Assembly (NCBI RefSeq): GCF_964204645.1
Contig: NC_134035.1
Location: 3,844,001-3,908,000 of the forward strand
Direction of reading: 5' to 3'
Length of the DNA stretch: 64,000 nt
From: Tubulanus polymorphus
Taxonomy: Eukaryota > Animalia > Nemertea
The translations under genes and the position numbers were made by a program. This document shows, in pieces, positions 9,246 to 62,016 of the stretch (positions within the stretch are counted from its first letter, which is position 1; every line of letters begins with the position of its first letter). The notes beneath the pieces were generated by a model. That model was not told the DNA's origin, made no database searches, and worked only from the letters and a program-made list of their open reading frames with translations.

Positions 9246-9272
9246 CTGGTTAATCTCTGATCTTGGTATTGG
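9246..9272 (-). CDS. Su(H): Su(H) 27-nt microexon, QYQDQRLT(R)
   Basis: tttttcag acceptor, gtaaat donor; supplies QRLTR that precedes EAM in CSL proteins; phase 2/2. Confidence 0.9.
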
Positions 9273-10392
9273 CTGAAAAATCGAAAAATAAAAAGAATTT
9301 CATCGTTATTACAAACAAAAAGAAGAGATATTCTTTCTAAAGTTTCAAACAGACGCGACTATCTGATACGTCTGTTTGTAGTAGTTTTCACCCAAAAACG
9401 ATGAGAGCAATTTGACATTAAAAATAGTGGTTTAATAGAAAGTGAATTAATAGAAATGATTCTGATTTTGAAAGTATTTTGTTATTTTTCAGGAATAGTT
9501 TAGCTCGAAAACAGAGTAAAAACGACTCTAAAATAGTATTCATAGTTAGGGCTGGTTGAATAGCGTAAGAAAAGGGTGTTCGGTTCCAATGACTGAAAAT
9601 AGAAAAAGGGTCCGACAAGAAATTAAGATCAGCATATACGAAAAGACTCAAATGAATAAATAACATGTTGACCGGTTGAAAAGGCGCGCGTCGCTTGTTC
9701 GCACTTGAAAAACCATTTCACTCTCCACTGTCCATGACAAATGACCAATCAGAGGACAACGCAGTTGTCATGACACGTTTCAAATCTGACAAATCGTCGG
9801 ATTGTAGAATTAATTGACCGCACGGATAGACTATGATTTAGTCGTTAACTCGCCGAGCTAGTCTGACCACCCAGGGAGCCAGTCGCTCAGAACTCGGTCG
9901 ACGAATAATGACCTTTTAGTTATCCAGTTAAACCAGTTATTGAGCAACTGACCTGCAGGTATTACACCTTGCCCGTGGATTAGTTCAAAAATACCTGACA
10001 CAAACAACTTGAATGTAAATGAAACTGTTTTCTTAAATCGAATCTTGTTCATGAAAGGAAACCATCGATGAAACATTTTGTGCCATGTGTCGATACACCG
10101 GGAATGCCACGCTGATATAACGAGAAAGATGAAGTGCGGAAAGTTTCCTTCAAGCTAGAAATTTATTGATTCGACGTTTCGACTATGACCTAATTGTCAT
10201 CTTCTTCAGGAAGGATATAGTCGAAACGTGTAATCAATAAATTATTAGCTCGAAGGAAACTTTTCGCACTTCATCTTTCAAGTTATATTAGTGTCGGATT
10301 CACAAAGGAAACTCACGGTGAAATACGTAATTTTGAAATGATCCTGTAAGGAATCTAAAATTTTGACGCCAGGTTTAAATGAAGCAGCCTAC

Positions 10393-11009
10393 CTCGGATA
10401 GAAAGGGTCGTGATAGTAATTCGAATATGCGTTGTATCGACAACTGTTGTTATTGTTGTTGTATCCGGCGTAGACGTTGTACTGGCCGTAGTAATAATCA
10501 TCCGAGTAATCGTCCCACCGATGGTAGGTGGCGCCGCCACCATACGCGTTGTGCCCAGAAGTAGGCGTAGTATACGCGTACGCGCCGGCCGTCGGGTTCG
10601 CGTTCCCAAACGACGGCTGATACGCCGGGCTCGATGGATAGGCGGCGCCGGACGTGCAGTACGGCGACGGCGCATACGGCGACGAGCACGCCAACGAGTA
10701 CGGGTGATGCGCGCACGCCGGCGAACAGTGCGCCGAACACGGCGACGTGGTGTGGTTGAAGCATTGTTGCGGCGTCGACGCCGGCGTGCACGGCGTACCG
10801 GGCGCGGCGGTCGTCTGCGGTGATACCGGGTACGACTGGTTGGCGTAATATTGCGTCGAATTCGCGCCGTTAAAATTTTGGTTGTCACCGCCGCCGCCGC
10901 TAATATTATCAAACTGCGTCAAGGAGGAAGACGACGAGGACGTGTACGCGCCGTAGTCCGCCGTTGCTGCGCTCGCGGCCGGCGACACATCGGAAAGTAA
11001 TTTCAACAT
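10393..11009 (-). CDS. Su(H): Candidate alternative first coding exon of Su(H): 205-aa Y/S/P/A/N-rich low-complexity N-terminus (MLKLLSDV...HDPFYP)
   Basis: ATG at 11009, open for 617 nt to ag|gtaggc donor in phase 2, the phase of the 9272 microexon acceptor; GC box and CCAAT upstream. Confidence 0.65.
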
Positions 11010-11149
11010 AATAATACGACGCAATTGATCGCCGCGGCGACCCCGGACGGTGCGTAAAAACAAACAAAAGTCGAATTCGCCGAGAACAATACGAAGAGAT
11101 TTATCCGCGTTCGGGTTTTTTGATCTATTCGCAAAATTCCCGTCCAAAT

Positions 11150-11720
11150 TTCTCACAAATTAACGTTCGCGAAATTACAAAAGGATCCGTCGGTTCGGTC
11201 GTTCAGATGCGCGTTCAGATCTTGGGAACAATTCTGTCCGTTTTTCCCAGCGACTAGCGACGAGTTACGACCGTCGTGTCGACGTTCGGTGAAATATGTG
11301 AGAACCGCCGAGAAAACCCGTGTGTTCGTTTCGTCGGGGAGGGGCGCGTCGGGGTCCGAGTCGACGAAGACGTGTGCCAAAAAACTATGAAATGAAAAAA
11401 ATGCGAACAAAAAACGACGAAACCCGAGGATTCGTCGACGAGACTTCAAAAGGCGCTCGGTTTTTGATCGGCGAATTTCACTTTTTTTTTTTTCTTTTGA
11501 AAAACGTTCAGGGGGAGGGACTTAAATACGTCGCACGTCGACGGGTTTTTAAAATTTTCGGCTGCTTTGTTGTTGTTGGGGAATTAAGTAGCGCAATTCG
11601 TCGCCGACTGAAAACATTTACGAGATGAAATTTCCCACCATAAATTTCGCCGTGAAACGTCGCGTTTGACAGGCCGCGGTGGGCGGGGCTTACGCCGGCG
11701 CCGGCGCAGCGGACGATTGG
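11150..11720 (-). promoter_or_regulatory. Candidate internal Su(H) promoter/5' region
   Basis: TGTGAGAA at 11150-11157 and 11297-11304, GC box GGGCGGGG at 11681, CCAAT (minus) near 11716, CpG-rich, upstream of ATG 11009. Confidence 0.45.
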
Positions 11721-11990
11721 CTGAACGGTAACTCGTCGGGCCGTACGCGAATGAGATTAATTTCAATCGACCTCGAAGAGAGCATAAAACGAGCAAGAAA
11801 ACGAAACGTCCCGCGACATCGAAAAAAAGGTCAACGGAATTATCTTTCTCGAAGTTGATAATGTAGCGCGATATAATCCCATGAAAAGAATACCAGCTCG
11901 GCCATTTTCCATCTATTTATGAGTGAATCGGAGAAATCTCTAGGTTTAAAATTCATTCATTTTTCATTGAATCAGGTATTGATACAGAGC

Positions 11991-12295
11991 AAGCGGTGTA
12001 GGGGCGAGTGGTTAGAGCGTTTGGGAATCGCTCTGGGAAGCCAGGGCGCGGGATCGAACCCTGTACATTACCGTAGTGTCCTCGGGCGAGACACTTATCC
12101 TCATTGGGTACCTGGCCTGATAGATGACTCCTGAGCGCCTAGTAGCTGCTTGGATGCTCTTTTGTGTCTAAATAAACTCATTCATTAATTAATGTTGCTT
12201 GTCCCCAGGGAGAGATGACGGATACAAGGAATAAGGCTGGGGGTAATTATACCAAATTTGAACTGACCCTGGTTAGGATACCTGCGCTATACCAA
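11991..12295 (+). mobile_element. tRNA-derived SINE with CORE-like central domain
   Basis: A-box TGGTTAGAGC, B-box GGATCGAACC, GTCCTCGGGCGAGACACTT core; second copy at 62935-63310. Confidence 0.75.
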
Positions 12296-13120
12296 TGAAA
12301 TTATTATCACTATACAGAAACAAGTCCATCATCCGAATTCCCTGAGTTTTCCAGGTTTTTGGTAAAAACCCTGAGCCCGGTTTTACAGACTGGTATAACC
12401 TTTAATTCGCGGGCTAACTCAATTGATAATGAGTTGAGTTAACCCCTGTATTAAAGGTAGTACCCGTCCTAAAAACCGGCCCCTGAGTTTTCCCTGATTT
12501 TTTCTAGATGTTTTATTCAAGATTTCCTGAGTATTCCAGGTTTTCCAATGTCACTGGCGACCCTGAACGGTATCGTTTCAAACGATCTATTTTTCGTTAT
12601 TTCTCAAAGTCGATACGCGACAACGCGATATATCGAATTCCGCGTGAAGAAGAGAAGCCGAAAATCATTCATGGCCCACAGGTGCGAATCGGCGTGTACG
12701 CGAATCGGGTAATGAATCATACACGCGTGATTAGATTCGCGAGGTTACCCCGTATTTTAATAATGTCCTAGCGCGACACAATCAGTCCATTGTCGAACGA
12801 TGCCCGAAATCCGTTTTACTTCATCAACCAAACGGAGCAGGTTTATTTAATGGCCGAATCCGTCGGCAATTATCGTCAATCACGCGCGCGGTCGCCGCGG
12901 TTTTTTTTGCGCGATTGATACGGTTTTTTTTAATGGTATTCACGCAGACGCGGATTCACCGGGGCAACGCCGACACTTACCGACAAGAATGCGCGCAGTC
13001 GAATTTACTATATAAGGCTAAAAATAAATGATACCTCGTTTTTATGTTTCTGCTGAGCTTAAAAGTTTACCCGGCCGGCCGCCTATCACCCTGTAGATTA
13101 CTTTTCTTTTTAAACATTAA

Positions 13121-13404
13121 TCATTTCTGTACCGACTTATTAATACCCCTAAAGTGATGGAGATGATTTGAAAATGTTTGAAAAATTCTGGCCCAGTGCA
13201 TCAAATAAGAGGCATCAGCTATAGTGCATCTACACCGCGGTGCAGTGTATCATTAGTTACTTATATCTAACTGTGTTTGACAGGTGCTGCCATCTTTCAG
13301 TAGATAAAAACATTTACGAATTACATCAATACATCGCACTGCCATGTACCAGCAAATCGATCACCGATTAAACACCGCGCTGAGGTGTAGACGCACTGAA
13401 AGGG
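13121..13404. mobile_element. piggyBac-like MITE, diverged copy
   Basis: right TIR and TTAA intact, left TIR degenerate. Confidence 0.75.
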
Positions 13405-13733
13405 TTAAACCGTTGCTTAAGTGGCACGGCTGCTGTACGATCTGTAAAAATCCAACTTGGTGGTCAAGCTTAAACTAAGGTATAAGGCTAGTATCTCAGG
13501 GAAGAATTAAAGTGAAAAGTAACGTATGTGGTAGATAGGCCGATGGACACTTTTCACTATTTTCAGTCAGTCATATTCGAACAAAACTTTTCCAAAGACT
13601 AGGCTAATTCCACGTCAAAAAAGACCTTTCACATTTTGAGGCGGAATCCAGATAAAAAAGAAAATCCACCCATTTAAAAAAAAACCGGAGATCACGCCCT
13701 GACACGTAGTCCCCAGTTCCTCACGATACGTAC

Positions 13734-13938
13734 TGTTTCGATAGGCCGTTGTGATGCCGCGTGTCTTGATCGCCGTGATGGTGACCTATAGGGGGCGACG
13801 GTGTAGGCATCGGGCTCGGTGGAGTGTGTATTGCATTGGACATCGTAGTGATGCTGAGTGGAGCCGTCGTCGACAGGTGTCCGAGTTCTCCATTGATTTT
13901 ATCGGGCGGCGTCAACGATCCGGGAATTCCTCCTGATT
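13734..13938 (-). CDS. Su(H): Su(H) coding exon, (E)SGGIPGSLTPPDKING...TPPSPMPTPSPP...GLSK
   Basis: ttttcag acceptor, gtacgt donor, 205 nt phase 1 to 2; GSLTPPDK and PPSPxPTPSPP are characteristic of protostome Su(H) N-termini. Confidence 0.9.
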
Positions 13939-14044
13939 CTGAAAATATACGTTCGACGGAAATTAAAAATCTGTCAAAATTAGAGAACATTTTTCACATT
14001 TTTGTGAGATTGATTCTTCTCTGACCTCATAAATTCAATTTAAC

Positions 14045-14215
14045 ATCGGGCCCAGTCCCAGTTGAAATGGGTTTAATTTGACTCTGGATCCAGTTCCACA
14101 ATTATGCGGGTTTAATAATATGACTGTGGACCCAGTTCCACAGTTGAATGGGTTTAATTTGACTCTGGATCTAGTTCTACACTTCCACAATTATTTGGGT
14201 TTAATCGGACTCTCT
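14045..14215. repeat. Degenerate tandem repeat, about 40-50-bp unit
   Basis: GGGTTTAAT...GACT recurs four times. Confidence 0.7.
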
Positions 14216-15434
14216 TGAGTTATATTTCCTAGGATTCCATTATTCAAAAAACTTATTTCATTCCCCGAAGCTTCGATTACGATCATCACTCATTCGTTCA
14301 AAATTTCCGAGGCATCATCTCCAGCTGGTTGCATTAACATCAATTACCCAATGATTAAAGCATTGTCGCGAGTCCCGCCCCTACAACGCATCATCCATTC
14401 ATCCATTCACGACGTATTTACCCTAGACCGGTCAGTTTAAATCGTTCAATCATCCGTTTCAACGAAAATAGTTCTATTCCTACCCTTCGGGCGGAGAGGA
14501 ACACTAGGGATATCGACGAGCTAGCAGCTATTGGTGGCGGCATTGTCAACGCCGTAGTATTACTCACATAACACCAGCTACGGAGCGACATTGACTCGGA
14601 CAATGCGAAACTATGATGAGAGAATAAACAGCTGTTAAATCCCCTCATTCACTCTCATGCATATTTAGCGGGGAGAGATAAGATTAGAAACGGACATTAA
14701 AAATGATATCTCGTCGACAGTGTGCGCACGCGCTCCTGCGTTTATAAGTCGCATTCGATGCAAACGCAAATAGTAGAATCATGACGCTATTGTTCAGGTT
14801 TTCACAGTAGAACAATGACGGATAAGAAGTGCCATTTATGAGTTTAATCGAAATCGTTAGATTCAAGCAGTTCATCGAGATTCGAGCCTTTCGGCTTCGT
14901 TCGTCAAAACATAGACTCTTAGGCACTTAGATCGGATGTTACTAGTATTTTCGACTCTATCCTTATAGTCATCTTCAGTGGAGTGATCTTGTTCCCTCGC
15001 CAATAATGTACATCCCTGTCATGTAGCTAATATATAAATCATTTGCGTATGTTCTAAAAATGTATCTAATGTCCATATATGACGAAATGAATTATGAAAA
15101 ATTATTTTTCAAGAGCTGGTTTCATAAACTGGTATTACCTCAAACCCTGAGGCTAATTCAATTGAAAATGAATTGAGTTAGCCCCTGGGTTAAAGGTAAT
15201 ACCAGCCTATAAAACCAACCGCCAGGTACCAGTATATCATTCCAGGCCCCAAGAATCGTATTGTTTTCCTGAAGACGACTATAAGGATATAGTGGAAATG
15301 TTGTATAAACTACAAGCACAAAGAAAAGAGCCTTTTCGGACTCATTTTTCATTTTGTCTTGTGGCATTTCACCCGTATCATCGTATGTACAATGTTTACA
15401 TCCTTCATTCCCGCGCATAATTTACGATACTCTT

Positions 15435-15794
15435 AAGCCTAGCGCACATCGACACTGCGATTGGAGGCAACTAGTTGCAAGGCAGTTTTCGGCGCATGAG
15501 AGGAACTGGCTGGATATGATCAGTTGCTTGAATGTGTCGATGTGAGCGAGCTTACGATTGGTAAGCGTCGATCTATCTCCAGTTCCAGTCAGTTGCCCAT
15601 GTTCTACTTTTGAGCAACTGGTTGTACTCAATCGCAGTCATATCCGTCGATGTGCGCGCTCTGGATCTCGGCGATCGACACGCGCCATGCAGTTGCTGCA
15701 ACTGACCGGTTGTAACAAGATTTCGATGTGCGCGGGGTAATCGTTCGGTAGCAACTAGTTGTCTCCAATCGCAGTGTCGATGTGCGCTAGGCTT
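15435..15794. mobile_element. MITE with about 44-bp TIRs, PIF/Harbinger-like
   Basis: AAGCCTAGCGCACATCGACACTGCGATTGGAG and its reverse complement at the ends; superfamily is inference. Confidence 0.75.
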
Positions 15795-16838
15795 CATGCA
15801 CAGTGGTTATAACGCACCCTACTAGCAAAACTTCATATAGCATTTATTGGTTCTTTTGCTACTAGTAATATAGGAACTATCCCTTGACCCTACCGAGCCT
15901 TTCCTAATCCCGACTTCATCGGACTGTACGAGATAACTTAAAATCGTACCTACATAATTCAACATTTACACAATACGTTTACTTAGGAGGTAATTCCGAT
16001 ACGTCCTGACCATTTAGAAATCCATAAATGTGCATAAGGCCGGTAAGACACTGGTATATATTACATGTGAATGTAGGAAAAATGCCACTGGAAAATATAT
16101 ACATATATCCGGTAAATGGAAAAATGAGATGGGAAATTCGAAGCCAATTTTCACATGTATTTAATTCCTAATTAATCACGGAACGTCGAAAATTACGATC
16201 AGTCGAACACTTTAAAAACGATTTATGAGATAACCATTGATGAAATACAGCGCGAGTCCGCGCGTTGTGACGACAATATAAAAATCCCACACTATATAAG
16301 AATGAAAAATAAAGTCCGAAATCTTTCCTCGAGCTAGTAGTTTATTCACTTTTTTTACTATGAACTGATGATCATCTTCAGCCCATAAATCTATATGCAA
16401 ATCTCATTATTTCGTCATAACATCAGTATTTCTGAAGACGACTATTAGGATATAGAAGAAACATCGAATAAACTACACTAGCTCAAGAAAACATTTCAGA
16501 CTTCTATCCTTCATTTGTAGTATGGGATTTTTTACAGTATGATTGACGAGACCTTAAATTTCGTTCGGCAATCGCAGATCTTTGTGAAAAAGTTGCTCAC
16601 GTCGAATCAGAAGATAAAGCAACGTCAGGCCATGTCTGGGTCTTAACTGGCCTAACTCGGACTCGAGGCAAATTTGGACCATGCATGTACATGTAAATCT
16701 ATCACTACTAAAATACTATCGGATTGATACTATGGCAATTGAGCCGAGTTACTTGCAGAACCAGTTTTCGGTCTCATCTCCCGATTTCCAGGTACGTAAG
16801 GTAAGTGGCAACGCAACCTTGATTGACGAATAACCAGT

Positions 16839-16868
16839 GAGAGAGAGTGAGAGAGAGGGAGGGAGAGA

Positions 16869-16911
<43 letters not shown>
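16839..16911. repeat. (GA)n microsatellite
   Basis: direct inspection. Confidence 0.95.
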
Positions 16912-16916
<5 letters not shown>

Positions 16917-17674
16917 ATGTTTCTGTGTATTAACAGTCACATGGTATGGTAAGATACAAGACACATCTGTCGGGTTTAAGACAAAAAAAAAATCCATGCC
17001 GTCTTATTGTCTCTCACTGGTACTAGCGCGCGCGCACACACACACTCTCGAACACTGACACTAGTGCAGCATATGGTGTCGCAAAACGAGAAAAAGGAAA
17101 ACCTGCCCATTTAAAACTATACGGGGAGATAATCGTCGAACGAACGCGACAAAGCGTTTCCATAATAACAGCAATCGAAATCTCCCGTTAAAACCGGTCG
17201 TAATTCCGCGCTACGCGAATGCCCGGGAATTCCGAAAACAAATTTCTAGAGATTTTTGCGACATTCGGCGGCAAGCGGGCACAAAAATGGGTAGAATACC
17301 TTATATTCACAGTAACTCGGGACCATCGTCAAACTAAGAAAATGCATATAAAATATCGATATCATTATCCATATCGTATTTGAATGATAACTAACCCTTA
17401 CCCCTTATTTAACAATTATCTAAAATTGTACAAAGTCATAATAACCGATAACCCCATATCGTAATGCAGTTATATGAAAATGAATCATCATAACAATTAT
17501 CATAAGAAATGAAAAGAAATTTCATTATTCATCATTTTACATATCATCCGTGCAAAGCATTGCTATCTAGATCAAAATCCCCGATCCCTATTGCGATAAA
17601 TTTCCTGCTTTAAAACTACAACCTGCTAAATATTCCGAAACCGTTTTTACGGATGCGCGCATCCCGTTACATAC

Positions 17675-17768
17675 CGTCCGAATATGTGCGCGTATATTCC
17701 TCGAATCCGTACCCGTGGCCGTGGTGGTGATGCGCCATCGCAAATTTCAAAGACGAAGGCGCCCACAT
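17675..17768 (-). CDS. Su(H): Candidate alternative first coding exon of Su(H), MWAPSSLKFAMAHHHHGHGYGFEEYTRTYSD
   Basis: ATG at 17768 (second in-frame ATG 17738) with in-frame stop upstream; g|gtatgt donor in phase 1, matching the 13938 acceptor. Confidence 0.55.
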
Positions 17769-18068
17769 TGGCGCGACACGCTATCGTCCGTCCGTCCGAA
17801 TTGGCGCGATGCCGCCGACGAATTTCGGTACAGCAGCGGCGATGTTTTTACGAATGATATTTACGCCGTATTCCGAGGAGAACTGCGTAGCCGCCGTAAA
17901 GGAGTATTCGTCGATAAAGGAGTATTCGTCGCCACTGCTGCTGTATCCCTCTCTCTCTCTTGTCAGAACGGTATCGTTGGTGAGACTCCGATGACGAACA
18001 ACGACGACGACGACGACAGAGTTCATTTAATATTAATTATATGCTAACACCTGTACGCAGACAGATTT

Positions 18069-18076
18069 TTCCCACG
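18069..18076 (-). promoter_or_regulatory. CSL/Su(H) binding site CGTGGGAA about 300 bp upstream of alternative exon 17768
   Basis: exact consensus match; function untested. Confidence 0.45.
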
Positions 18077-19181
18077 GTGGCGGACAATTCATCCATCGCT
18101 CGCTCGTATATTATACAGCTTACGGGGCCACAAGTAAACGATGATAGCATCGAACGAGAAGACGCCGCCGTACCCTGTAATCTGTATACAAATAATCGCG
18201 CAAACACTGACGGATTTAGCGTCCGAAACCACTACATGCAAATGCAAAAGATTTGAAATGGAATTTATCGAAGAGCTTTATTGAGAATTAAAATGAAAAA
18301 ATTTTGAGAAGACATCTCGGCTCCTCTAGAGGCTACACCTGGCCATGGTGTCTATAGAAACCACGAAATGCATCTTAATTCTTGATAAACTTCTTATCTT
18401 AAGAATTTATATATAGTCGGTTTTCATTTTTCTATTCATCTTATTAGATAGTAGCACTTTATCAGTAACCTGCTCTATGTACTATCGGTGTCAAAATATC
18501 CGATAAGCTTTTGACAAAACAACAAAAAAACGTTTTTTTTAGTATTTCCAAAACCTAGATAATTAGATTTAATGGATTTTAATCGTTGAAATTCATATAT
18601 AGCAAGTTTTAATCTGATTTTAAAACTACGCTCCATGTCCCAGTGTATACATGGGCTATTCTACGATCGCGATTTACACTGTTTTCTAGAACAGTCATTA
18701 GTAATTAACGGGTTTTCAGGGTGGCTCAATCTCGCACCCGTTCATAATCGATATTATTCTATTAAAACGACGAACACGAAGATGTTAATAACGTTATGGG
18801 TAAGCACGCACGCGCGCGCGTTGGACCACGCGACCGACCGGGTTTCCGTATTCCGTACTCGCGTACACAAATGCGGTGGGGCTAAGCAAACGACGCGAAG
18901 TTGTATTTGCTCTGAAGAAATACCAGACGCGCAATCTACTAGATCTACTATTACTACGTAATCATAAATATCACTTTAGAACACGGGGAGTGGAGAACAG
19001 GTCAAAATCGATCGCGGGAAAACAAACGCGGCGCGTATAGATTCGAATTGCCTCTACGGTATTGATTAAACAATAGAAAATGACGCCGTTCAAATGCGCT
19101 TTTCCGTTTAGTAGAACGACGGCCTTTTTTACGGTCATATTTACCGGTAAAGGTAAAAAATGATACCTAAATTCTCCTTAA

Positions 19182-19480
19182 CCCTTTCAGTGCTGGCTAA
19201 TTAATACCCTATAGTGCTGAAGATAATCTGAAAATTTTGAAAAATTCCACCCTAGTGTGTTGAATAACGGGAATACCACGAAAAAAGTGTCAAAAAGTGT
19301 CTACACCGCGGCGCAGTGTATCGTTAGTTACTAATATTTCACTATGTTTGACATGTATTGCCATCTTTCAATAGAGATAAAAACGAATTACTAATTACAC
19401 CAATACACCGCAGTGCGGTGTACTAGCAAAATCTATCACTGATTTATACACCGCACTGCGGTGTAGACGCACTGAAAGGG
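19182..19480. mobile_element. piggyBac-like MITE
   Basis: TIR CCCTTTCAGTGC/GCACTGAAAGGG flanked by TTAA on both sides. Confidence 0.9.
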
Positions 19481-22400
19481 TTAAGCGGCCAGGGTCTGGT
19501 TTCATAGACTGGTATCAGAGTTATCCCTCGGGGTAAATCCTCCTAAATCTGGGTAACAACCACCTTAGTAACAATGAGAAACCATGGTAATAACTGACGA
19601 ATTTCAAATCGATCCCGGGGACTATTTCGCTTCCGCATCTATGAAACCCGGCGCCAAACTTTTTCGTAAACCGCGATGAAATTTGTAATCAGTTCATTTC
19701 TATAACTGCCGCGTCTGTAATAGGAAAATTCAACATGATTACAAAAATAGTATAATGAACAGGGTAGATAGGCGGCTGGCCGGGTCAACTTTTAAGTTCA
19801 GCAGAAATGAGAAACAAGGTAGCTAGTTCTATTTTCCGCACAAAAGATTTTCAGTTCAATTCGAAACTCAAGTTCGAACTGAAGACGAGTCGTAAGATTA
19901 AAACCGAGCGCCGGGTTTTAAGTCATCAAAGACGCGATCACACGTAGATGATGTGGCTCGAGCCAAATTTGGCCCGTGCCTAATTAGAGAACGCGTTCAC
20001 ACGCAAACCATTCAATCGATACTAAACAATGCTCAAACAAAGCGAAGTGGATCATTTCCGGTGCCAGTTGCAATTCAAACGCAATCATTCGTCTGGTGCT
20101 AAAATTTGGCTCGGGCAGGCCTGGTCCGACATTTTTGGTCGGGCCAAAAATGCTCGTGTGATCGCGGCTAATGTTGAAGGAAAGTCGAACTCCTGATTAA
20201 GCCATCCATAACTCGCTGACAATTCTAGTTCGACAAATGACCTATAAGACTAAATTCATCCGTCAGTCAGATCCGGCGCGTAGCTCGGCGATGACGCACA
20301 GAATCGCACGGGCGAAATCCGAACTTCGCTCTTTTGAAGCGCGCGTGATATCGGGGTTCATTTGGACTAAATTAGGTCTTCGTAATTCTAAAGCGCATTG
20401 AAAAACGCCGCGAAAACGATCGCATTAAGATACATACGCCCCGAGGCTCTCGTCATTTCAACAAAAATAGACAGGAAAATACTTCTGAAGAGGTTCTTCA
20501 AACGACAATAGCTAGAAAGTCGCGTTGTTGTTGTTATTATTATTACCACAAACTCCAGTTATTTCGGATAATTGTAAAACAGCTAAGAATGCCGGCTACA
20601 TAAAGATATACGGACGAGAAAGAAAAAAAAAATAAAGCGTAAAAAATTTTTTTGAGAGAGAGCGACGAGCGATTTATGTCGTCGCTGTCAAGAAAATGAT
20701 TTAGCGTGAGAAACGTCGAGAGCAACAGTAGCGTTCGACGATAGACCGAGGCCCCGTAAAGCCGGGCAACGCGGCGCGCCCGTTCGTAAAGTCACGGTCC
20801 GCGCTTCGCGTTCTCCAAGGAAACCGGGAATTTTCCCAAGACTCGTCGCCGTTAATTACCCGTTGGTTTATTGTAATTCGTTTAGCAGTTTATAAGCGAT
20901 ATGTATATATATAATATAGCGTACGCGACGAGGTTGTTAAAATATCGGGACGTCTTACGTTTCTTTGTAAACTTTCGCTATTAACTTCTGAAAATAACAG
21001 TTCATCATTATCAACGTTTAAATGGCTATTCGAAAATCTTTTCGCGAACGCCTTGAATACGATAATGCGAAGAATGCTAAATTTAAACGCTCGAAAACTA
21101 TAAGAACTTTGTTCGTTTTTCGATTTATCGGAAAACGTCTTCCGAAAGTAAGATTTGCTTCTCGAAGCCCCGATGAGGGAAACGCGGAAAAGGAAACACG
21201 TTTCCCCGCGTTATGTCTACTTACGAGAAACGTGGTTTAGGGAACGAAGTTTCTGAGATCGAATGGATCAATCAATCCTGGATATAAGGAGTTTAGACAG
21301 GGTCCCTACAGATCAGTTATTCCTGGATATAAGGAGTTTTCAAGGGGAAACTTTCAATATTTCTAGGAAGTGTCTGCAGCACTTTTATATCCCAATTACA
21401 GTGGACTCCTAAATCTGTACTGTTTATCTCCGTAAACTGGTGTCATCTACATGCCTGGGAGTACACTAAACTCTAATTCAGTATGCGCCTAATTTGGTAA
21501 AGACAAAATCCTGGTCCAAACTGTACCAATTTTGGCAGTCTACTATACAACTACGAACAAGACAAAAATGTCTAATTACCTAATTCTCAAAAACGAAGGA
21601 GTTCGGGGCATTTTGCTCAAATTAAAGGAGTTTCAAGCACTTTTAATCAGTGTATTCAAGGAGCCGTAGGATATCTTTGAAATGCTTCTAGTTCCACAGT
21701 TGCGAGTTACTGAGTTAACTCACCGGTTAACATCAATTAAAACGAGTTAAAACGTTTGAACTCATAAAGAACCGAATCTAACTCGGAACTCGGAACCGAG
21801 GAACTGAATCTGGGCGTGTCAATTTTCCAACCAGACCGGACCCCGCGAGCGAAAAAAAAATTTCATCGTCCCCGCATAATGAATTTTCAATCAGTCAATA
21901 TGCGCAGCACGAAAACAACGCGGCGCGCTTTGCTTGCCATAAGCATACAAGATACCGATAACAGCATACGCTCAGTCGTGTCGTCTCGTTCGTCAATTTT
22001 ATCAGAAAGTCGGCCCCGGAGAGTTGGATTTTATAGATAGCGCGTTAAAGACAGCCGGTCATTTTCCCACGCGCGCGCGATTCCATTATCTTAATGCATT
22101 CATATACACCAGCCCTGCAGCAGCAGCAGCAGCAGCATACAGCGTCGTCGTCCTAGTCGATGATGATTATAGCCACGATCCAACCAAGAAACAACTTGGC
22201 CCGTATTTGAACCGGCCCCGGACCAGAGATGAGTCAAATTTGACCCGTGCTTAATTAGAGAGGACATTCACACTTACGTCGGTAAAGCTGCGCTCACGCA
22301 CGGAGAAGATTTGGCCCGGTTCAAACCGGCCCGGACAAAACCTGGCATCGAATTTGGCCCATGCTTACTGTAATTAGAGGGGACATTCACTTACATCAGT

Positions 22401-22826
22401 TAAGCTACCATCACCTAGGGGCATTTGGTGGGGGTCATACCGGCCTCAATGAGACCAAAGTTAAATTTGGCCTTCAAACAGACTAATCATTCACTATCTA
22501 CTAAGATATTATCAAAATGATACTGTGGCAAGTGAGGTGAGCTAGCTTTCACAAGGAATAATTCGTTAAAATTTGGCCCATGCCTTTTAACAGACCGCGT
22601 TCAAAAAATCACTCACTCATTTTCTACTAAAATACTATCGAAATGATACTGTGGCAAGCGAGGTGAGCTAACTTTTACCAGGAATTTTTCGTTGAAATCT
22701 GGCACGGGCCTGGTCCCGACATTTTCATGGTCGGTTTCGAAAATCGCTCTTAGAATCGAGTCCCATCTCAAAGCGTACTTTTTCTCAAATCGTGGCTTTT
22801 TCCCCAAGATACTTTCTTCTTCTTAA

Positions 22827-23112
22827 CCCTTTCAGTGCTGACTAATTAATACCCTATAGTGCTGGAGATAATTTGAAAATTCTGAAAAATTCCACCCTAG
22901 TGTGTTGAATAACGGGATACTATAGTGTGTCTACACCGCGGCGCAGTGTATCGTTAGTTACTAGTATTTCACTATGTTTAACACGTGCTGCCATTTTTCA
23001 AGAGAGATGATTACTAATTACTAATTACATCTCAATACACCGCAGTGCGGTGTACTAGCAAAATCTATCACTGATTTATACACCGCACTGCAGTGTAGAC
23101 GCACTGAAAGGG
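22827..23112. mobile_element. piggyBac-like MITE, same family
   Basis: same TIRs and TTAA flanks, internal sequence near-identical to 19182-19480. Confidence 0.9.
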
Positions 23113-25233
23113 TTAAAACCCTTCATCTTCATATGCCGCGGCACAATTTCTTCTACGAAACTACAACTAACCCTTTATTATATTGGGCACGACTTTTAAA
23201 TAGGGGAATAATATTTCAGCATCGATGTATGATGATGACAACGATGATGATGATGATGATGATGATGTTGTATTTGTTGACCGTGGGAATCGCGTCAGAT
23301 CGCGCGGGGAACAGTTCCGCGTCGAGCATCCTCGTGAAATATGCCGACGCGAAACGAAAAGAAATTGATACGAATATCGAATAACCAACCGTTCGAAGTC
23401 ATTTTCATATTCTCCGCAACATATTCCGACGAGTTTGTAAAGTTCGCCGTAAACTGTCCAAATGAAATCCTGCATCCACAAGTCGAGAGACTTAGTGGTC
23501 TTAATTAAATCTTAAGACTGGTCTTAAGTTGAAAGAAGACCATGGAACTGCCTTGCTCTTAAGGCTGGTCTTAATCTCAACCAAATAAATACGAAGCTAA
23601 TCTTAGTTCTATGGCCAATGAAAAAACTTCAGTCATCAGACTTTCATTTTTTGCTTGAGTTGCAACTCAAAACCTATTTGATAAATGTGGAACTGGGTTC
23701 AGTATTTGTTTCAGAATCAGGGGCTAGTTGTATAGTCGAGACTAGAGTCCAAAAGTGGTCCTAAATCTCAAAGCTGATCTTAAGTTGTTAGATTAATTAT
23801 ATTGATCTGAGTTGGCCTTAGACCATCTTAGTCCCCGTAGCCAATCTAACAACTAACATCAAATCTTAAGTTTTGAAAGCACTCTTGGACTCATCAAATT
23901 CATGATTTTGCCACTGGCCCCGGGGCTTCAGATGGAAGTTAGGACAGTTTTTGCGAAATTTCTGGAAAGCTCTGGTCTAAGCTATGGGAACGTTAGACCA
24001 TTTCGAAAACGATTTCCATAACCATGGAACTGGATCATCGGGTTTGGTTTCGTGAGATACTTCAAACTCAAACCTGTAAAGGTCTAATATTGTACGTGAA
24101 GTGCTTAATGTAAATAAAACTATATCCATTTTTTTCGGAATACTTTAAAACTCACAGTGGGACTGGGACCTATGATGTACGACGATGCCTTGTTTGGGTG
24201 ACGCTTTTCATAAGCTAGTTAGCAGTTAATACAATCATACAGATGCCAGAGACATCTAGTGATAAACAAACGAACTACTCGCACGGGCCGGGTCATTAAA
24301 CTCTACACACAAAAACCAGCAATCGTGCATAGATTGGTAAATGGTGCCATCTATGAATAAACAGTCAAATCATTATCCTTCGATAATTGATTCGATACTA
24401 GCAGATACAGTCAAGATTTTAAATGGTGGGATTTTAAAAAAAGGCTGTTGGAAAAGAAAGTTGAGTCCTATAACAATATCGAACTTCGAAAATGGCACAA
24501 ATCTAAATGCAAGACTAATGAATTTTTCCGAAAACTCTATACAGTAAGTCAGTGAGATATGAACTATTGCCCAATTAGTACAGACTCCTACAAAATTGGT
24601 ACTGTTTAACGGTAATTCAGTGGTTTTGTAAGCAACTTTTCGTCCTAAAAACTACCTTAACTCGGGTTTCCTATTTGGTAACCACCTAATTGGGTAATGG
24701 ATATCCAGTGACCCAAACGTTCACCACGTTTGAGTGTGGTTAACGTACTAATAGATATCCTGGTCCTTAACTGTACCAAATTAGGCTTGGTTTTCTGTAC
24801 AACTACAAACTAGACAAAAATTTTTCAGTGTCTATTTCTCAAAATTGAAGGAGTTTCAGGTATTTTGTATAAAGTAAAGGAGTTTCAAGCACCTTTTAGA
24901 GCATTTTCCATTTAGAAGAAGTTTTTAAGGAATCAAGGAGTCATTGGGACCCCGGGCCCAGTTGCACAGTCATGACTTTAGTCCAAAACTGATGCTTAAT
25001 CTTAAGACGGTCTTAAGTAGTTGTTAGATTGGCAATATAGAACTAAGTTGGTCTTATAACGGTCTTAAATCTTCCCCAGTTAAGGCTTAGACTTAAGACC
25101 AGTCTAATACCATTTTAGCTCTTAAGCCATATCTAACTTAGGCCAGTCTTAAGTTTTACTACCATTTTCAGTTTTAAGTCTTCGACTAGGGAACTGGTCC
25201 CTGTTAAAGATTTATAAAATATAGAAATCATAC

Positions 25234-25816
25234 CGTGATCCGTCGTGTTGGAGAAATCTCTTCGATTCTGCGAAGACGTATTGTTATCATCCTGTTCGGT
25301 CCTGCCGCTGCCGCCGCCGCGATCGACCGCTCGATAGTGTGTACCGTCGAAGCCGTGTCCCGTCGACGCGGCCGCCGCGTTGTAATCGTCGTAATTCGCG
25401 CGGCGTCGATTCGCGTTGCGTTCGTTGTCGTTATTGAAACTGTCGATCAAACCGGACTCGACGACGTCTTCGAAATTGTTCGTCGCGAGCGTCGTCCGCA
25501 CTGTAGACTTACCCGCCGTTGTCGCCGCGTAGCCGTTCAGATTACGATCGACGCCGCCGCCTGGTGTCGGCAACTGAAGTCGATTCGTCAGATCTAACGG
25601 ATTGTCAAACGCGGTCGTCATCCGTCTGCTCATCTGGTGGTTACCATGGTGACCGAGGAGCGTCTTCGCGGCGGTTACATTGTTGGCCACGGTGGCCGTG
25701 ACGGTGGAGGCACAGTTCGGTAGGTTGTTAAATGAGAACGCATGATGATTGTTCATCTGTCCGAGGATCGGTGCATCTCTCTGTAAACTGGCTCCTAATG
25801 TGTAACCATAATACGG
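25234..25816 (-). CDS. Su(H): Su(H) long-isoform coding exon, PYYGYTLGASLQRDAPILGQMNNHH...FDNPLDLTNR...TTDH
   Basis: atttcag acceptor, gtatga donor, 583 nt phase 0 to 1; contains PxDLS-like PLDLT; joins in frame to 13938. Confidence 0.85.
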
Positions 25817-26237
25817 CTGAAATAATACGACGAAAAATAATTGAATACACGATAATTACCTGAGCCGTTTCGGGGTAATCTCATCGAAGTCGATTACCTG
25901 AGCTGTACGTTACAAGGGGTAATCCCCGAGGAAGTCGATTACCTGACCCATATGGCATATGGGGTAGATTACCAACCTGTACTGCGTGTTTAGGATAATC
26001 CTGTGGAACTGGATTACCTGGGGTCAGTAGCTCTAAAATTGCTTCAAGAAAACCGGCGAATAAATACCATAGTAACAATGAACTTTCAATTGTCACTTTG
26101 TCAACTATCCACTGGTTGACTAGAACCAACTTTAGAGCAATTGGCCCCAGACTCAGGATAAAATAGTGTGGGATACGTTTACCCAACGCATACTAGGCTG
26201 AAGGATTCAAAACAGTGGGACTCATACAGACCCATAC

Positions 26238-26632
26238 AGCATATAAGGGTCAATCTATCGGAATCAAATTACCTGAGCCTGACAGCATAGGGGTCAACCT
26301 AGCGGACTCTATTACCTGCCCCCGCACAGCATAGGGGTCAACCTAGCGGACTCTATTACCTGCCCCGTACAGCATAGGGGTCAACCTAGCGGACTCTATT
26401 ACCTGCCCCGTACAGCATAGGGGTCAACCTAGCGGACTCTATTACCTGCCCCGTACAGCATAGGGGTCAACCTAGCGGACTCTATTACCTGCCCCGTACA
26501 GCATAGGGGTCAACCTAGCAGAATCTATTACTTGCCCCGTACAGCATAGGGGTCAATCTAGAAGAATCTATTACCTGTCCCGTACAGCATAGGGGTCAAC
26601 CTAGCGGACTGAATTACCTGCCCCGTACAACA
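26238..26632. repeat. 43-bp minisatellite, about 9 copies
   Basis: unit CAGCATAGGGGTCAACCTAGCGGACTCTATTACCTGCCCCGTA; starts at 26283, 26327, 26370, 26413, 26456, 26499, 26542, 26585. Confidence 0.95.
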
Positions 26633-28399
26633 TATTGCAACCCACGGGACTCATTAACCACAGAGCGCGAATATAATGACAGTTTTAATTTCCACAGATC
26701 AAATTGAACTTGCGGAACCCGTGGAACTGGGTGCCGGATTAATTGTACTGAATCAACTAAAGTCGTTTAACGTAACGCTCAGTAGGTCGGCTGGGTGTGT
26801 GCGTGTATGTGTGTGTGTATATAGCGTAGAAGGTAATTTTCTGCCGACCCGAGGTGTTAGTGTGGGAAAGTTGTCGATCACTATAAATACAGCAATTAAT
26901 GTACATTTATACTCTCTCTAGCTCTCTCTCTTAGCGCGGCGGCGCGCGTAAATGCCGCAATGCCGGCCGTTTACAGTCGGTGTTCTTGCTGACTGTAGGA
27001 ATGTCACCGAGCTTCCCCCGAACCGTGGGAAACTAGCTAATACGCGATATCAAATTACTCAAATTATTTCCTACGAATTCTGTCGCGCTTCTTACACGGA
27101 CGGACGCAGGGCCCAATATAATCAAACCTAATTCTAAAGCGATTTAACGTGAACTGGATTTAAACTCACTCCGACTTGAACTATTACCCTTAACTCGAAA
27201 AGTTCAGTTTTAACTAAAACCCCGCCAAAAAAGGTCATTAGAGGAAGGTCATTTTACTATTCAGCTCCTAATCTTTGTAATGAACTACCTCGCAGCATTA
27301 GAGAGTCTCCATCTGTCTCAGCCTTTGAATCCAGATCGAAAACTTTTCCTTTTATAAGCACCTATGGTGATCAATATTCAACTCGTACTATATAAGCTAA
27401 AAAATCTTATCGTTATTAGTCTATTAACCCCCCCCCCACGATAGCTCATTAGACAAACATTTAAGTTGTAATAACCCATACGTACGTTCAGAACCTCAAG
27501 GGGCATTGTATAATCCGCGATGGAAAACTATACATATTTTCAGGGATGCTTGGCAGCTGTAAGTGTCCTGAAACAGGTCCTCGTCGTCGCCCGGTGCGGT
27601 ATTTATTCAACACACGCGCTGCGCATTTTTAACAACGTACAAATGGTAAACGTACGACGATGACATAGAGCTCTCGCCCGGCACATCGATTGACCCGTTT
27701 TCGCGAATTACTAAACGACCCTCACCCCATTTACGGCGCAGCTAACGAGCCCTTCAGGATATTCTCGGGGTTACGAAACGCTGGCACGTAGAATTCGCCG
27801 CGTCGATCGATAAGGCGACCGCGTTCGAATAAGATAACTACTAAGTTCGAACCCAAGCTCTGTTTTATAGTCGAGACTTAAGTCCAAAAGTGATCTTAGT
27901 TCTTAAGTCCGGTCTATAGAACTAAGTTGTCCTTAGATCGGTCTCAAGTCTAAGCCATGACTGCAACCGGCCCCAGGATCTAGTCAGGATGAGCGAAATC
28001 TCTGAATAATCACAGACAGACGAAAACTCCAAAGTGGCACTGGCTCCCGAATGATTTTGCATTTTGACATCTAAATCATACAACGCGTGGAACGAAGTCC
28101 TGTACCGTGAAAAACTGGACACCTAATCAGTTCAAAACTGTGAAACCGATACGAAGAGCGTTGAACAATTACTTTAGGTGCTCTTCTATAAAGTAGAACA
28201 GTAATACTTGGATATGCAAAAACTCTTTTCGTGCATAGGCCTAGAGTAGAACCATCTACAAGAAGATTTAATCAACCCCTGTCAGTGATGCCTGTGCCTT
28301 CCGACAAGGCATCGGAAGATGATCGCGCGTCATCATCTCTTTCAACCCCAGTCGGTCGAACTATCAACATCAGGTCGTACCATCAAGATCGAGACTTAC

Positions 28400-28429
28400 C
28401 TGCGCCAACATAACGTGCTGTTCATTCAT
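28400..28429 (-). CDS. Su(H): Su(H) long-isoform first coding exon, MNEQHVMLAQ
   Basis: ATG at 28429, consensus cag|gtaagt donor, phase 0 matches the 25816 acceptor. Confidence 0.75.
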
Positions 28430-29266: not shown

Positions 29267-29274
29267 CGTGGGAA
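29267..29274 (+). promoter_or_regulatory. CSL/Su(H) binding site CGTGGGAA upstream of the long-isoform ATG
   Basis: exact consensus match; function untested. Confidence 0.45.
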
Positions 29275-29708
29275 ACTACATTTGCATCTGACAAACGAAT
29301 AACAATAGACATGCGGCTAGTGCTTCGATGAAACACCCTCCAGCAGCAGATGAGAGCGCGAGATGAGGTCGTATATAACCCCCCCCCCCCCCGGTAAAGT
29401 CTTAGAATAAGCCGCTTTGAAGCATCCTATGCGTGATCTACCTAAGCCTCTATTGCGTATTATTTAACCCCAATCTTATTAAATATCAGATTTGATTAGA
29501 TAGATACTTCGTCCTGAGCTGGTGTTTAATCTCCTTTTATCTATTTAATCGTTCAATTCGAGAACGATTCAATTCGAGATTGATATCGTTGTATAATAGG
29601 TTTTTATCTGCTATCGAACACCCCCTCAACCCCCCCCCCAGGAATAGAGCGCGAACTAATGGAAGAATCCTTAAAAATGTTTCTCAAGGCCCGCGCGTGT
29701 TGACATAG

Positions 29709-32700: not shown

Positions 32701-32930
32701 GAGTGCACTAGTATCTTATCACTGCATGCAAAATCATGAGGATAAACATCTTTCCCAGGGACATTGCTGAACACAGCGAAATACTCAAACCACTCGTCGA
32801 CACCGCTACACTAGTGCACCGTTTTGCAGAGGATACAACACTACTGTATAATAAGATAAAATCCCACTATTTACAGATTAAAAGAATTTAAAAACCAGAA
32901 TTTATTTATTAAATCTAAATTATTTAAAAG

Positions 32931-32971
32931 ACACGACGTTTCGATCTCACCCTAGAGATCATCGTCAGGTG
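32931..32971 (-). ncRNA. Minimal type I hammerhead ribozyme motif, mirror copy
   Basis: reverse complement of the plus-strand core; stem I only 3 bp. Confidence 0.65.
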
Positions 32972-32981
32972 AACAAAGAAC

Positions 32982-33023
32982 ACACCTGACGATGATCTCT
33001 AGGGTGAGATCGAAACGTCGTGT
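32982..33023 (+). ncRNA. Minimal type I hammerhead ribozyme motif (Penelope-type)
   Basis: acac-CUGACGA-u-gaucuc/gagauc stem II-GAAA-c-GUC-gugu; stem I acac/gugu; predicted cleavage after C33019. Confidence 0.8.
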
Positions 33024-35365
33024 CTTTTAAATATTTTAGATTTAATAAATAAATTCTGGTTTTTAAATTCTTTTAATCTGTAAATAGTGGGATTTTATCT
33101 TATTATCCGTTCACCACGTTTGAGTGTGGTCATCGTTCTACTACTACTACTACTAGTAAGGGGATTTGAACCCAGTATCCCGTAGTTGAATGTTCTAGGC
33201 ATTCACCCATACTGTTCCACTAATGCACTAGTATCTCATTGCTGGGTGCAGAGAAACGATGGGGACTAGTGTATCAGCCCGCAACAATACCATATTCAAC
33301 AGAACCCACGACCTGATATCACAGAGTCACGTACGCGCCACTTGTTCAAACCATCCCAACAAGATGATATTTGAAAACAACAGTGAAAATAGGATGACAT
33401 AAATTCGAAGAAGTTGATTTATAAGTAGTATGTGCTTTGATTACAATTTCTGGGAAGTCTTTGGAAAAATTGGCTAATACTTCATTTCATGACACCAAGG
33501 CTCTTAGGGGGCACTCAGTTTTGAGGTTCATAGGGATGTGTCATATCATATTTCTGGATCCAGCCTGGCTGAGACAGACACTCTTGCACTTGCCGATACC
33601 GCATGCTATAACTGTATTAACCTCGTTCGGATTAGGGGCAAAACTGCAGATAAGGTCACGTTGCTGCTGTTAAGTTGCGTTTAGTACTATGGTTAAGGGA
33701 TATGGCAGGGATAGGCCTACGGCGTCAACATGCATTACCATCACAGACACTAACAGTAACCTAGCCCACGTGCGGTCTTCATGGCTCAGTAGATAAGGTA
33801 GTTCACTGATGGTAGGCTCTAATCCCAGCAAATAAAGCTTTAACGTTCCTGTGTAAAACCTCACCGTGATAAACCCTCTAGGCTAAAGAACATAAGCCCC
33901 CCATAGCAAAAAGTTAACAGTCTTAACTACAGTTTAGGTCACATTCCCACTGTATGGCGCTAGCGTCAAAAGAATAGCGTTATGGTTAGGTACATAACCA
34001 TCGGGGACAACTGCGTTTGCTCCAAGTTGACTTCATATGCAGTTAGATCTTTCTAAGTTTGGACAAGTAACTAATGCCACACATATACAGCGGACAGGTG
34101 CCATAAACTGCATAAGACCTATCTAAGTATGGACACGTGTCTAACGCAACATTATTGCGGAAAGGTGCGTTCTACTCTTCTCAGTGCAAAGTTTGACAAC
34201 AAGTCATCATGAAGTAGGCCTAACTAACGCCTTACATACGCCACGGTAAGAACCTTAAACTGCAATAAGACCTTTCTAAAGATTGAGCTATTGTTATTAT
34301 ACTCACATCAGAATAGAATCAATGACGGCTGCAGAATCACAATAACAACATCATAATAGTATATGACGAACCCGGAAGTGAGTTCAGTAGGTTCAGAGAG
34401 GTGCCCTGAAAATAGTCCAATTCAACCCGGAATATTGAAGATGACAGCGGCTTAAACACGGTACAATTTTCACCTAGCCCTAGATCTGTACGAGACGCTT
34501 GCTAGTGAGAACGCTTACCGATTTACGGAGAATGTATCCAGCTGAAAATCAACTTTAATCGTCGAGAATTCCAAACTTCATACACAGAGTTCCGCACAAG
34601 ATGGCGCATTCGGAGTGAGGGTTCGATCGGATCCGACATGGGCTAAATTCTATTCAAACTCGAGACCATGTTCGAATCCCGCGATTATGGCAGAATATTG
34701 CTCACGTGCCACAGTAATAATACTACCCCTTTGGCGGTCGCGTGCTACCCCTATATATATCATTAACGGCGGATTTGAGAACTAATTCAGATTGCGGGAC
34801 AGTTTAATTACTTCGTTTGTTGCCTAATAATGATAAATTTATCTATGAATATATACTAGATTTTGATAAATGTCGCTATAATGTTCACTTGTCCTACAGA
34901 ATTAAAAGAACTTCCCCAAGCCTGAAGGCTCTACCAAAAATGGGAGAATGCGCTATAGGAAAGAAAAAATAATTGGATGGGCTTATACCGAGGTTTGTGA
35001 AAATATCCGATCATGAAACTAAACCACAGACAGGTTCTCTGAAAGGTTATAAGCAGCCAGAGCGGTCTCTCCTGTCACTGGGTTTAACCTGATGAAAAAA
35101 CCAAAACAAACAGAACTAAAATTTCATATACAATTTCAACATTTATTTCCCACTTGTATTTCTACTATAAATAAGCCTTTCACATAATCTCAGACGACCT
35201 TGAACTGGGCGCAATTCACGAAATTATGACCACAAGGATTTTCGTAAACAATTTATAATATAACTTAATTTTTCTGGTAACCAATTGAGTCAATTTACAA
35301 TTGTCGGCTTTTTAATGTTTTATCGCTATATCACAGATTTTTTCAAAAAACTAAATGCCTTTAAA

Positions 35366-37153: not shown

Positions 37154-37429
37154 TTTCACTTAGGCCTATTTAACCCTTTTTCCACGACTACGTAACGTCT
37201 TTTTTACAAAAGGAATAAAAGAAAAATGAGATAATTACAACATTTGCATATAAGAGATGTGAATAAATCGTATAAAAACATACGGCTGGTAAAAGTGGAA
37301 TCTCAAACATCGATCACCAACGAGCGAAATTAAACTGCACAATAAATTCGAAATTGAATTGTATTGATTTTATCAAGTTTGATCTATTAAAACGCTAAAT
37401 AACGAATTGGACATATGTCTTACCTACTT

Positions 37430-60717: not shown

Positions 60718-62016
<1,299 letters not shown>

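What the first reader, a model, noticed from the sequence alone, without database searches (positions are those of the whole stretch)
9246..28429. Su(H) alternative first exons may form a promoter-switched co-repressor code (CtBP+Gro, Gro only, neither)
Seen: three ATG-bearing exons, each ending in a GT donor whose phase matches a downstream acceptor. Isoform L (28429, 25816, 13938, 9272) carries PLDLT (25586-25600) and GSLTPPDKI (13895-13921); isoform M (17768, 13938) keeps only GSLTPPDKI; isoform S (11009, 9272) has neither. Established (recalled, Miller et al. 2019 eLife): protostome Su(H) outside Pancrustacea recruits CtBP through a PxDLS-type motif and Groucho through a GSLTPPDKV-type motif. 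Inference: promoter choice tunes the default-repressor strength of the Notch effector without Hairless. I do not know of this graded isoform series being described.
Basis: partly seen in the sequence, partly recalled or inferred. Interest (0 to 1): 0.85.

Follow-up and report, generated by a model that had tools for sequence, protein, structure and literature searches.

The report
Ancient alternative promoters of Su(H)
The gene for the Notch pathway's DNA-binding protein has three alternative starts that keep or drop its two repressor-recruiting motifs, and two of the starts have promoter elements conserved across worms, lamp shells and molluscs that look like Notch feedback switches.

Summary
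This is the 5' half of a ribbon-worm Su(H)/CSL gene (minus strand). The three starts are supported, with corrections: exon 2 ends at 25234 (not 25513) and the Gro exon at 13734. Database models of Octopus hold all three classes. The M exon has counterparts in annelids, brachiopods, molluscs, chelicerates, hemichordates and sea stars, and carries its own aromatic-acidic motif. The S exon recurs in Lineus (unannotated) and cephalopods only. An RNA-like run shows the spliced Gro exon and transcription inside S and part of the M region; the M and S junctions themselves were not seen. New here: a CSL-like site plus E-box, 14-15 nt apart, lies before M in 7 of 7 lophotrochozoan loci, and an octamer plus CSL site before L in 6 of 7, suggesting Notch autoregulation with different partner factors. 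'Graded repressor strength' stays an inference: M persists in lineages lacking the CtBP or Gro motif, so it adds something as well as removing CtBP. No binding or expression data. No paper found describing this; the scan had not noted it on other DNA.

The parts
29267..29293 (-). L-promoter module: TGTCA, octamer ATGCAAAT (29287-29280), then a CSL site in reverse orientation (GTGGGAA on + at 29268-29274)
   Evidence: octamer+CSL pair once per locus in window, Lineus, Owenia, Liolophura, Patella, Magallana; none in about 11.7 Mb of resampled DNA
28400..28429 (-). First coding exon L1 (10 codons, phase 0)
   Evidence: 30-nt phase-0 first exon also in Lineus, Lingula, Patella, Magallana
25234..25816 (-). 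Exon 2, 583 nt, with CtBP-type motif PLDLT at 25600-25586; in-phase but unsupported inner donor at 25512
18030..18076 (-). M-promoter module: CSL site CGTGGGAA (18076-18069), E-box ACAGGTG (18054-18048), A/T-rich TATA-like element with AATTAA (18041-18030)
   Evidence: one sense-strand match in each of 7 lophotrochozoan loci, 170-426 nt before the M ATG
17675..17768 (-). Alternative first exon M (31 codons, phase 1) with aromatic-acidic motif YGFEEY
   Evidence: run X4 holds 0.38 of the words of 17660-18260
13734..13938 (-). Exon 3, shared by L and M, with Groucho motif GSLTPPDKI at 13921-13895
   Evidence: spliced contig with these exact ends in run X4
10393..11009 (-). Alternative first exon S (205 codons, phase 2), Tyr/Pro/Ser-rich, ends with SCRY..SN and YHDP elements
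   Evidence: X4 contig 10661-10982 lies wholly inside it
9246..9272 (-). 27-nt micro-exon common to all forms (start of the conserved CSL body)
   Evidence: depth
5924..6019 (-). Next common exon (start of the LAG1 DNA-binding domain); the rest of the gene runs off the window's left end

Best explanation
One Su(H)/CSL gene is read from three promoters. L gives a protein with CtBP and Groucho motifs. M replaces the CtBP exon by a short conserved aromatic-acidic peptide and keeps the Groucho motif. S replaces both by a long Tyr/Pro/Ser-rich peptide. All share the DNA-binding body. L and M promoters each carry a Su(H) site paired with a different partner site (POU octamer at L, bHLH E-box at M), so Notch signalling most likely feeds back on Su(H) and the cell's partner factors decide which N-terminus is made; cells with proneural-type bHLH input would swap CtBP-recruiting Su(H) for a form that represses less or differently. 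Shown: exons, phases, motifs, conservation of exons and promoter modules, splicing of the Gro exon, RNA-like coverage inside S. Inferred: that M and S are first exons spliced as drawn in this species (about 0.95 and 0.85), that Su(H), POU and bHLH factors bind the modules (about 0.7), and that the forms differ in repression (about 0.6).
For: Exon layout conserved in 7 lophotrochozoans. Octopus sinensis models X1/X2, X7 and X5/X6 are the three classes. M-type models in Owenia, Lottia, Patella, Haliotis, Octopus, Mercenaria, Dreissena, Mytilus, Magallana, Ptychodera, three sea stars, Centruroides, Tachypleus; unannotated M in Lineus and Liolophura and S in Lineus. Promoter modules fit the S, E, V1 and V2 site definitions of fly Notch-responsive enhancers, one of them the Su(H) autoregulatory enhancer (PMC3390367). 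Motif binding shown for centipede Su(H) (PMC6777938); a PxDLT motif recruits CtBP in KLF3 (PMC3874204). Ptychodera models X2/X4/X7 lack exactly the Gro motif stretch, a second route to the same switch.
Against: M and S junctions not seen in this species (contigs only, one RNA-like run of unrecorded kind). The only deposited protein of this gene is L-type. Other species' isoforms are database predictions whose read support I did not see. S not found in Lingula, Owenia, Liolophura, Patella, Magallana, and window S versus Lineus S is not significant pairwise (139 of 2000 shuffles). The CSL-like site before M is non-canonical in Lingula and Magallana and the module is absent in Asterias. No binding, reporter or tissue data.
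Confidence: 0.6

Rival explanations
1. Pure subtraction code: the promoters exist only to drop CtBP and then Groucho, giving strong, medium and no default repression; the M and S peptides are inert linkers.
For: The motif content follows exactly this series; Octopus has the same series; Ptychodera removes the Gro motif by another route.
Against: M peptide motif fits 16 of 19 taxa and 0 of 4014 residues of L-type N-termini (pattern drawn from these sequences); M is kept where there is no CtBP or Gro motif to drop; S ends in conserved elements shared by Lineus and Octopus (0 of 2000 shuffles).
Confidence: 0.15
2. The promoters are kept for where and when Su(H) is expressed (separate feedback loops); the N-terminal differences are of little consequence because repression runs through co-repressors that bind the shared core.
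For: The strongest non-coding conservation is in the promoters; mouse RBPJ also has alternative first exons with stage-specific use (PMC1995199); core-binding co-repressors are known (own knowledge).
Against: CtBP, Gro, M and S motifs are islands of conservation inside otherwise divergent N-termini.
Confidence: 0.17
3. L and M are real but S is not a first exon here: it is a GC-rich intronic open frame, a retained intron or an internal cassette.
For: No S junction; no protein hit for S; GC 0.59 favours open frames; patchy distribution.
Against: S ranks first of 106 donors against Lineus/Octopus ends; same intron, phase and terminal elements in Lineus; Octopus and cuttlefish models begin with it; X4 covers S while unique intron bins are empty, and reaches 11 nt above the only nearby in-phase AG at 10972.
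Confidence: 0.08

Closest known systems
Protostome Su(H) with direct CtBP (PxDLS) and Groucho (GSLTPPDKV) motifs (Miller et al. 2019, PMC6777938)
   Same: Both motifs, same order, in the N-terminal region; Malacobdella has the same PLDLT variant.
   Different: The paper gives one protein per gene and has no occurrence of 'isoform' or 'promoter'; it does not mention M or S exons or promoter modules.
Mouse RBPJ alternative first exons (PMC1995199)
   Same: Several first exons joined to one CSL body, with stage-specific use.
   Different: [quoted passage not shown]
Drosophila Su(H) autoregulatory enhancer ASE5 and E(spl)m-alpha enhancer (PMC3390367)
   Same: Su(H) + POU sites (as at L) and Su(H) + E-box + AATTAA (as at M); Su(H) autoregulation.
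   Different: Fly modules hold five Su(H) sites, ASE5 lies downstream of the gene, and neither is tied to isoform choice; here single sites at fixed spacing sit just before alternative first exons.
Promoter-switched transcription factor isoforms such as TAp63/deltaNp63 and short TCF1/LEF1 (own knowledge)
   Same: An internal promoter removes an N-terminal effector region from a DNA-binding protein.
   Different: Those lose an activation or signal-binding region; here co-repressor motifs are dropped stepwise and new conserved peptides are added.

Membership tests
CSL / Su(H) / RBPJ | LAG1 DNA-binding, beta-trefoil and TIG domains | tested here: met
   P0026, identical DNA to the window, hits PF09271, PF09270, PF20144 above cut-off; core 92.5% to Lineus Su(H)
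Protostome Su(H) with direct co-repressor motifs | [quoted passage not shown] | tested here: met
   PLDLT at the orthologous position
Protostome Su(H) with direct co-repressor motifs | GSLTPPDKV-like motif C-terminal to it | tested here: met
   GSLTPPDKI in exon 3
Protostome Su(H) with direct co-repressor motifs | Motifs bind CtBP and Groucho | not testable with these tools
   Shown only for centipede sequences
Alternative-promoter isoform series | Separate first exons spliced to a shared body | tested here: inconclusive
   Phases, conservation and models in other species fit; M and S junctions not seen in this species
Alternative-promoter isoform series | Independent transcription starts | not testable with these tools
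   Only contigs were available; conserved modules are indirect support
Notch-responsive 'Su(H) plus local activator' module | High-affinity Su(H) site with a partner-factor site (E-box RCAGSTG or POU site) | tested here: met
   Window fits S+E+V2 at M and S+V1 at L by the definitions
Notch-responsive 'Su(H) plus local activator' module | Activity depends on Notch signal and on the sites | not testable with these tools
   Needs reporter or ChIP data

The most novel reading that the evidence does not exclude
The bilaterian ancestor's Su(H) already had a second promoter giving an M form with its own acidic-aromatic, activation-domain-like peptide; in lophotrochozoans this promoter is driven by Su(H) plus a bHLH factor through a module of fixed spacing, so Notch signalling exchanges its own effector from a CtBP-bearing repressor to a differently acting form. 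This would be a feedback switch at the level of the CSL protein itself, lost or replaced in flies and vertebrates.
Probability: 0.35. Interest if true: 0.88.

Novelty: new variant of a known kind. Interest (0 to 1): 0.72.

Why it matters
CSL is usually treated as one constant protein switched between repressor and activator by its partners. A conserved set of promoter-chosen N-termini would mean that in many invertebrates the effector itself changes by cell type. It also answers a point raised by Miller et al., that CtBP and Groucho probably cannot bind the one N-terminus together: isoform choice is one way to pick. Two short promoter modules conserved across nemerteans, annelids, brachiopods and molluscs are directly testable in Platynereis, Owenia, oyster or cephalopod embryos. 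Cloning or knock-down designs that use only the long form would miss M and S.

Tried and rejected
Protein search with exon S alone: no hit (length limits apply). Octopus, cuttlefish, Ptychodera and centipede loci could not be fetched, so the position of S in cephalopod genes and arthropod promoters were not read. Run X5 (2015, RNA guess) laid nothing. CSL sites are not clearly enriched over the whole window (12 versus 6.3 expected, 6 of 100 shuffles); the signal is positional. No shared element found upstream of S between window and Lineus. The exon-2 extension line used a wrong frame and is not used. Ten paper searches found no description of these isoforms or modules; the library lacks most subscription papers.

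Full report
Identity. The minus strand of window 1-29300 holds the 5' half of a Su(H)/CSL gene. A deposited 704-aa protein (P0026) maps to it; its locus L001 (assembly GCA_964204645.2, record OZ123236.1) is identical to the window over 35,756 nt. It has the three CSL domains and its core is closest to the nemertean Lineus longissimus (92.5%). I recall this assembly as the ribbon worm Tubulanus polymorphus; no tool confirmed the name.

Checking the observation. The three ATG exons, their donors and phases are as stated, and both motifs are in frame. Two corrections: P0026 carries exon 2 on to 25234 and ends exon 3 at 13734. The 25234 end is the orthologous one: in Lineus, Lingula, Owenia, Liolophura, Patella and Magallana the CtBP exon ends at the same phase-1 position after a His, followed by the Gro exon and, in most, a micro-exon. 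P0026 begins at an internal Met of exon 2, as do X2-type models of many relatives, which hints at a further non-coding first exon that I did not locate.

RNA evidence. Of the runs offered, X3 behaves as genomic DNA, X1 as patchy DNA, and X4 as RNA: unique intron bins are empty, one 1,393-nt contig covers exactly 13734-13939 with about 717 letters before and 471 after, its depth accounts for the 27-nt micro-exon bin, and a 322-nt contig lies wholly inside S. X4 also holds 0.38 of the words of 17660-18260, as a roughly 250-nt M exon piece would (inference). The kind of run is not on record, contigs give no strand, and neither the M nor the S junction was seen; contigs drop minor branches, so this is not absence.

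Exon M. It is the only ATG-led phase-1 candidate in its 11.3-kb intron and ranks first of 315 GT sites with a profile built from 14 other taxa (z 3.5). Database models with a short first peptide joined to the Gro exon and lacking the CtBP exon exist for Owenia, Lottia, Patella, Haliotis, Octopus, Mercenaria, Dreissena, Mytilus, Magallana, Ptychodera, Asterias, Patiria, Acanthaster, Centruroides and Tachypleus, more loosely Eurytemora and Cherax. I found unannotated copies in Lineus and Liolophura. These peptides share an aromatic-x-aromatic-acid-acid-aromatic core (window YGFEEY; 16 of 19 fit, 0 hits in 4,014 residues of L-type N-termini; the pattern was drawn from these sequences). From memory it resembles acidic activation domains; that is a lead only. 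M therefore predates the protostome-deuterostome split, and it is kept in sea stars and acorn worms, whose long form has no PxDLS motif, and in a horseshoe crab, which has no Gro motif. It cannot exist only to remove CtBP.

Exon S. It is the only long phase-2 candidate in its intron; a stop-free frame of this length arises in 198 of 20,000 resamples. Octopus models X5/X6 and a cuttlefish protein begin with a Pro/Tyr-rich peptide, lack both motifs and join the same micro-exon. Lineus has an unannotated 144-codon exon in the same intron and phase whose end matches Octopus (0 of 2,000 shuffles). The window's S has the same two elements (SCRY..SN and YHDP) in swapped order, is weakly similar pairwise (24 and 139 of 2,000), but ranks first of 106 donors against those two ends. 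No S was found in Lingula, Owenia, Liolophura, Patella or Magallana. So the full three-step series is shown for two nemerteans and cephalopods; the L/M pair is general.

A TGGGAA followed 14-15 nt later by CAGGTG (CAGATG in Patella) occurs exactly once on the sense strand of each of the seven lophotrochozoan loci, 170-426 nt before the M ATG; the pattern allowed 10-20 nt and the chance rate is 0.0016 per kb. It was first seen in five loci and relaxed to fit Lingula; Magallana was an independent hit, and in Liolophura the module led me to the unannotated M exon 231 nt downstream. An A/T-rich element follows, identical over 14 nt between window and Lineus. The site is a canonical CSL site in five loci, not in Lingula or Magallana, and the module is absent from Asterias. 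Before L1, an octamer ATGCAAAT lies 4-5 nt from a reversed CSL site in six of seven loci (Owenia being an independent hit; Lingula keeps only TGTCA and the CSL site), with no match in about 11.7 Mb of resampled DNA. By the definitions of Liu and Posakony (PMC3390367) these are S+E(+V2) and S+V1 combinations, the codes of a proneural-cluster Notch target and of the fly Su(H) autoregulatory enhancer. Binding here is inferred, not shown; other factors can read TGGGAA and CAGGTG.

Mechanism. Most likely (0.6): three promoters; L and M are Notch-autoregulated with different partners (POU versus bHLH); the products share the DNA-binding body but differ in co-repressor motifs and in an added peptide, so promoter choice changes how Su(H) represses or activates in a given cell. 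Ptychodera models that lack just the Gro stretch show a second route to the same switch. Rivals: pure subtraction (0.15), promoters kept for expression only (0.17), S not a true first exon (0.08).

What is known. Miller et al. 2019 established the two motifs and their binding for centipede Su(H) but say nothing of isoforms or promoters. Mouse RBPJ has alternative first exons without a reported co-repressor switch. Fly Su(H) autoregulation is known but by a downstream enhancer. The isoforms sit unremarked in RefSeq models. Ten searches found no paper on them; the library is incomplete. Promoter-switched effector isoforms are a known kind, so I rate this a new variant of a known kind, interest 0.72. 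Earlier scan notes concerned other loci; two on CSL-site clusters elsewhere may have prompted the site check.

Noticed in passing
proteins P0226, P0230, P0231 (Ptychodera flava X7, X2, X4): Models lack exactly the 14 residues that hold the Gro motif, as an alternative acceptor inside the exon would give; the locus could not be fetched.
   Followed up: partly
L003, L004, L005, L006, positions 1-2800: A MINDY deubiquitinase gene lies head-to-head with Su(H) in Lingula, Owenia, Liolophura and Patella; in this genome the upstream neighbour is a C2H2 zinc-finger gene instead.
   Followed up: no
window 35366-37159 (-): Single long open frame of about 597 codons with several C2H2 zinc fingers.
   Followed up: partly
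window 26243-27032 (-): Within intron 1: two CSL sites (27031, 26868), a TATA-like word near 26910 after a GA run, and a 43-nt tandem array (9.1 copies) whose first unit holds a CAG|GTAATT donor at 26617; a candidate for the non-coding first exon implied by P0026.
   Followed up: partly
L006 2444 and L007 2404: Patella and Magallana share a further CSL + E-box element (GTGGGAA directly followed by CACCTG) about 560-600 nt before L1; not seen in the window.
   Followed up: no
M module in L003, L005, L006, L007: One or two GATA words follow the E-box in Lingula, Liolophura, Patella and Magallana where the window, Lineus and Owenia have the A/T-rich element.
   Followed up: no
L008 2450-2485 (Asterias): A degenerate form of the L module (TGTCAG, CAAAT, TTCCCAC) lies about 520 nt before the long form's start.
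   Followed up: no
window 60814-62016 (+): 400-codon open frame with a collagen triple-helix repeat hit.
   Followed up: no
window 32848-33140: Long palindrome noted earlier by the scan (s1-492874) as carrying hammerhead cores; not examined here.
   Followed up: no
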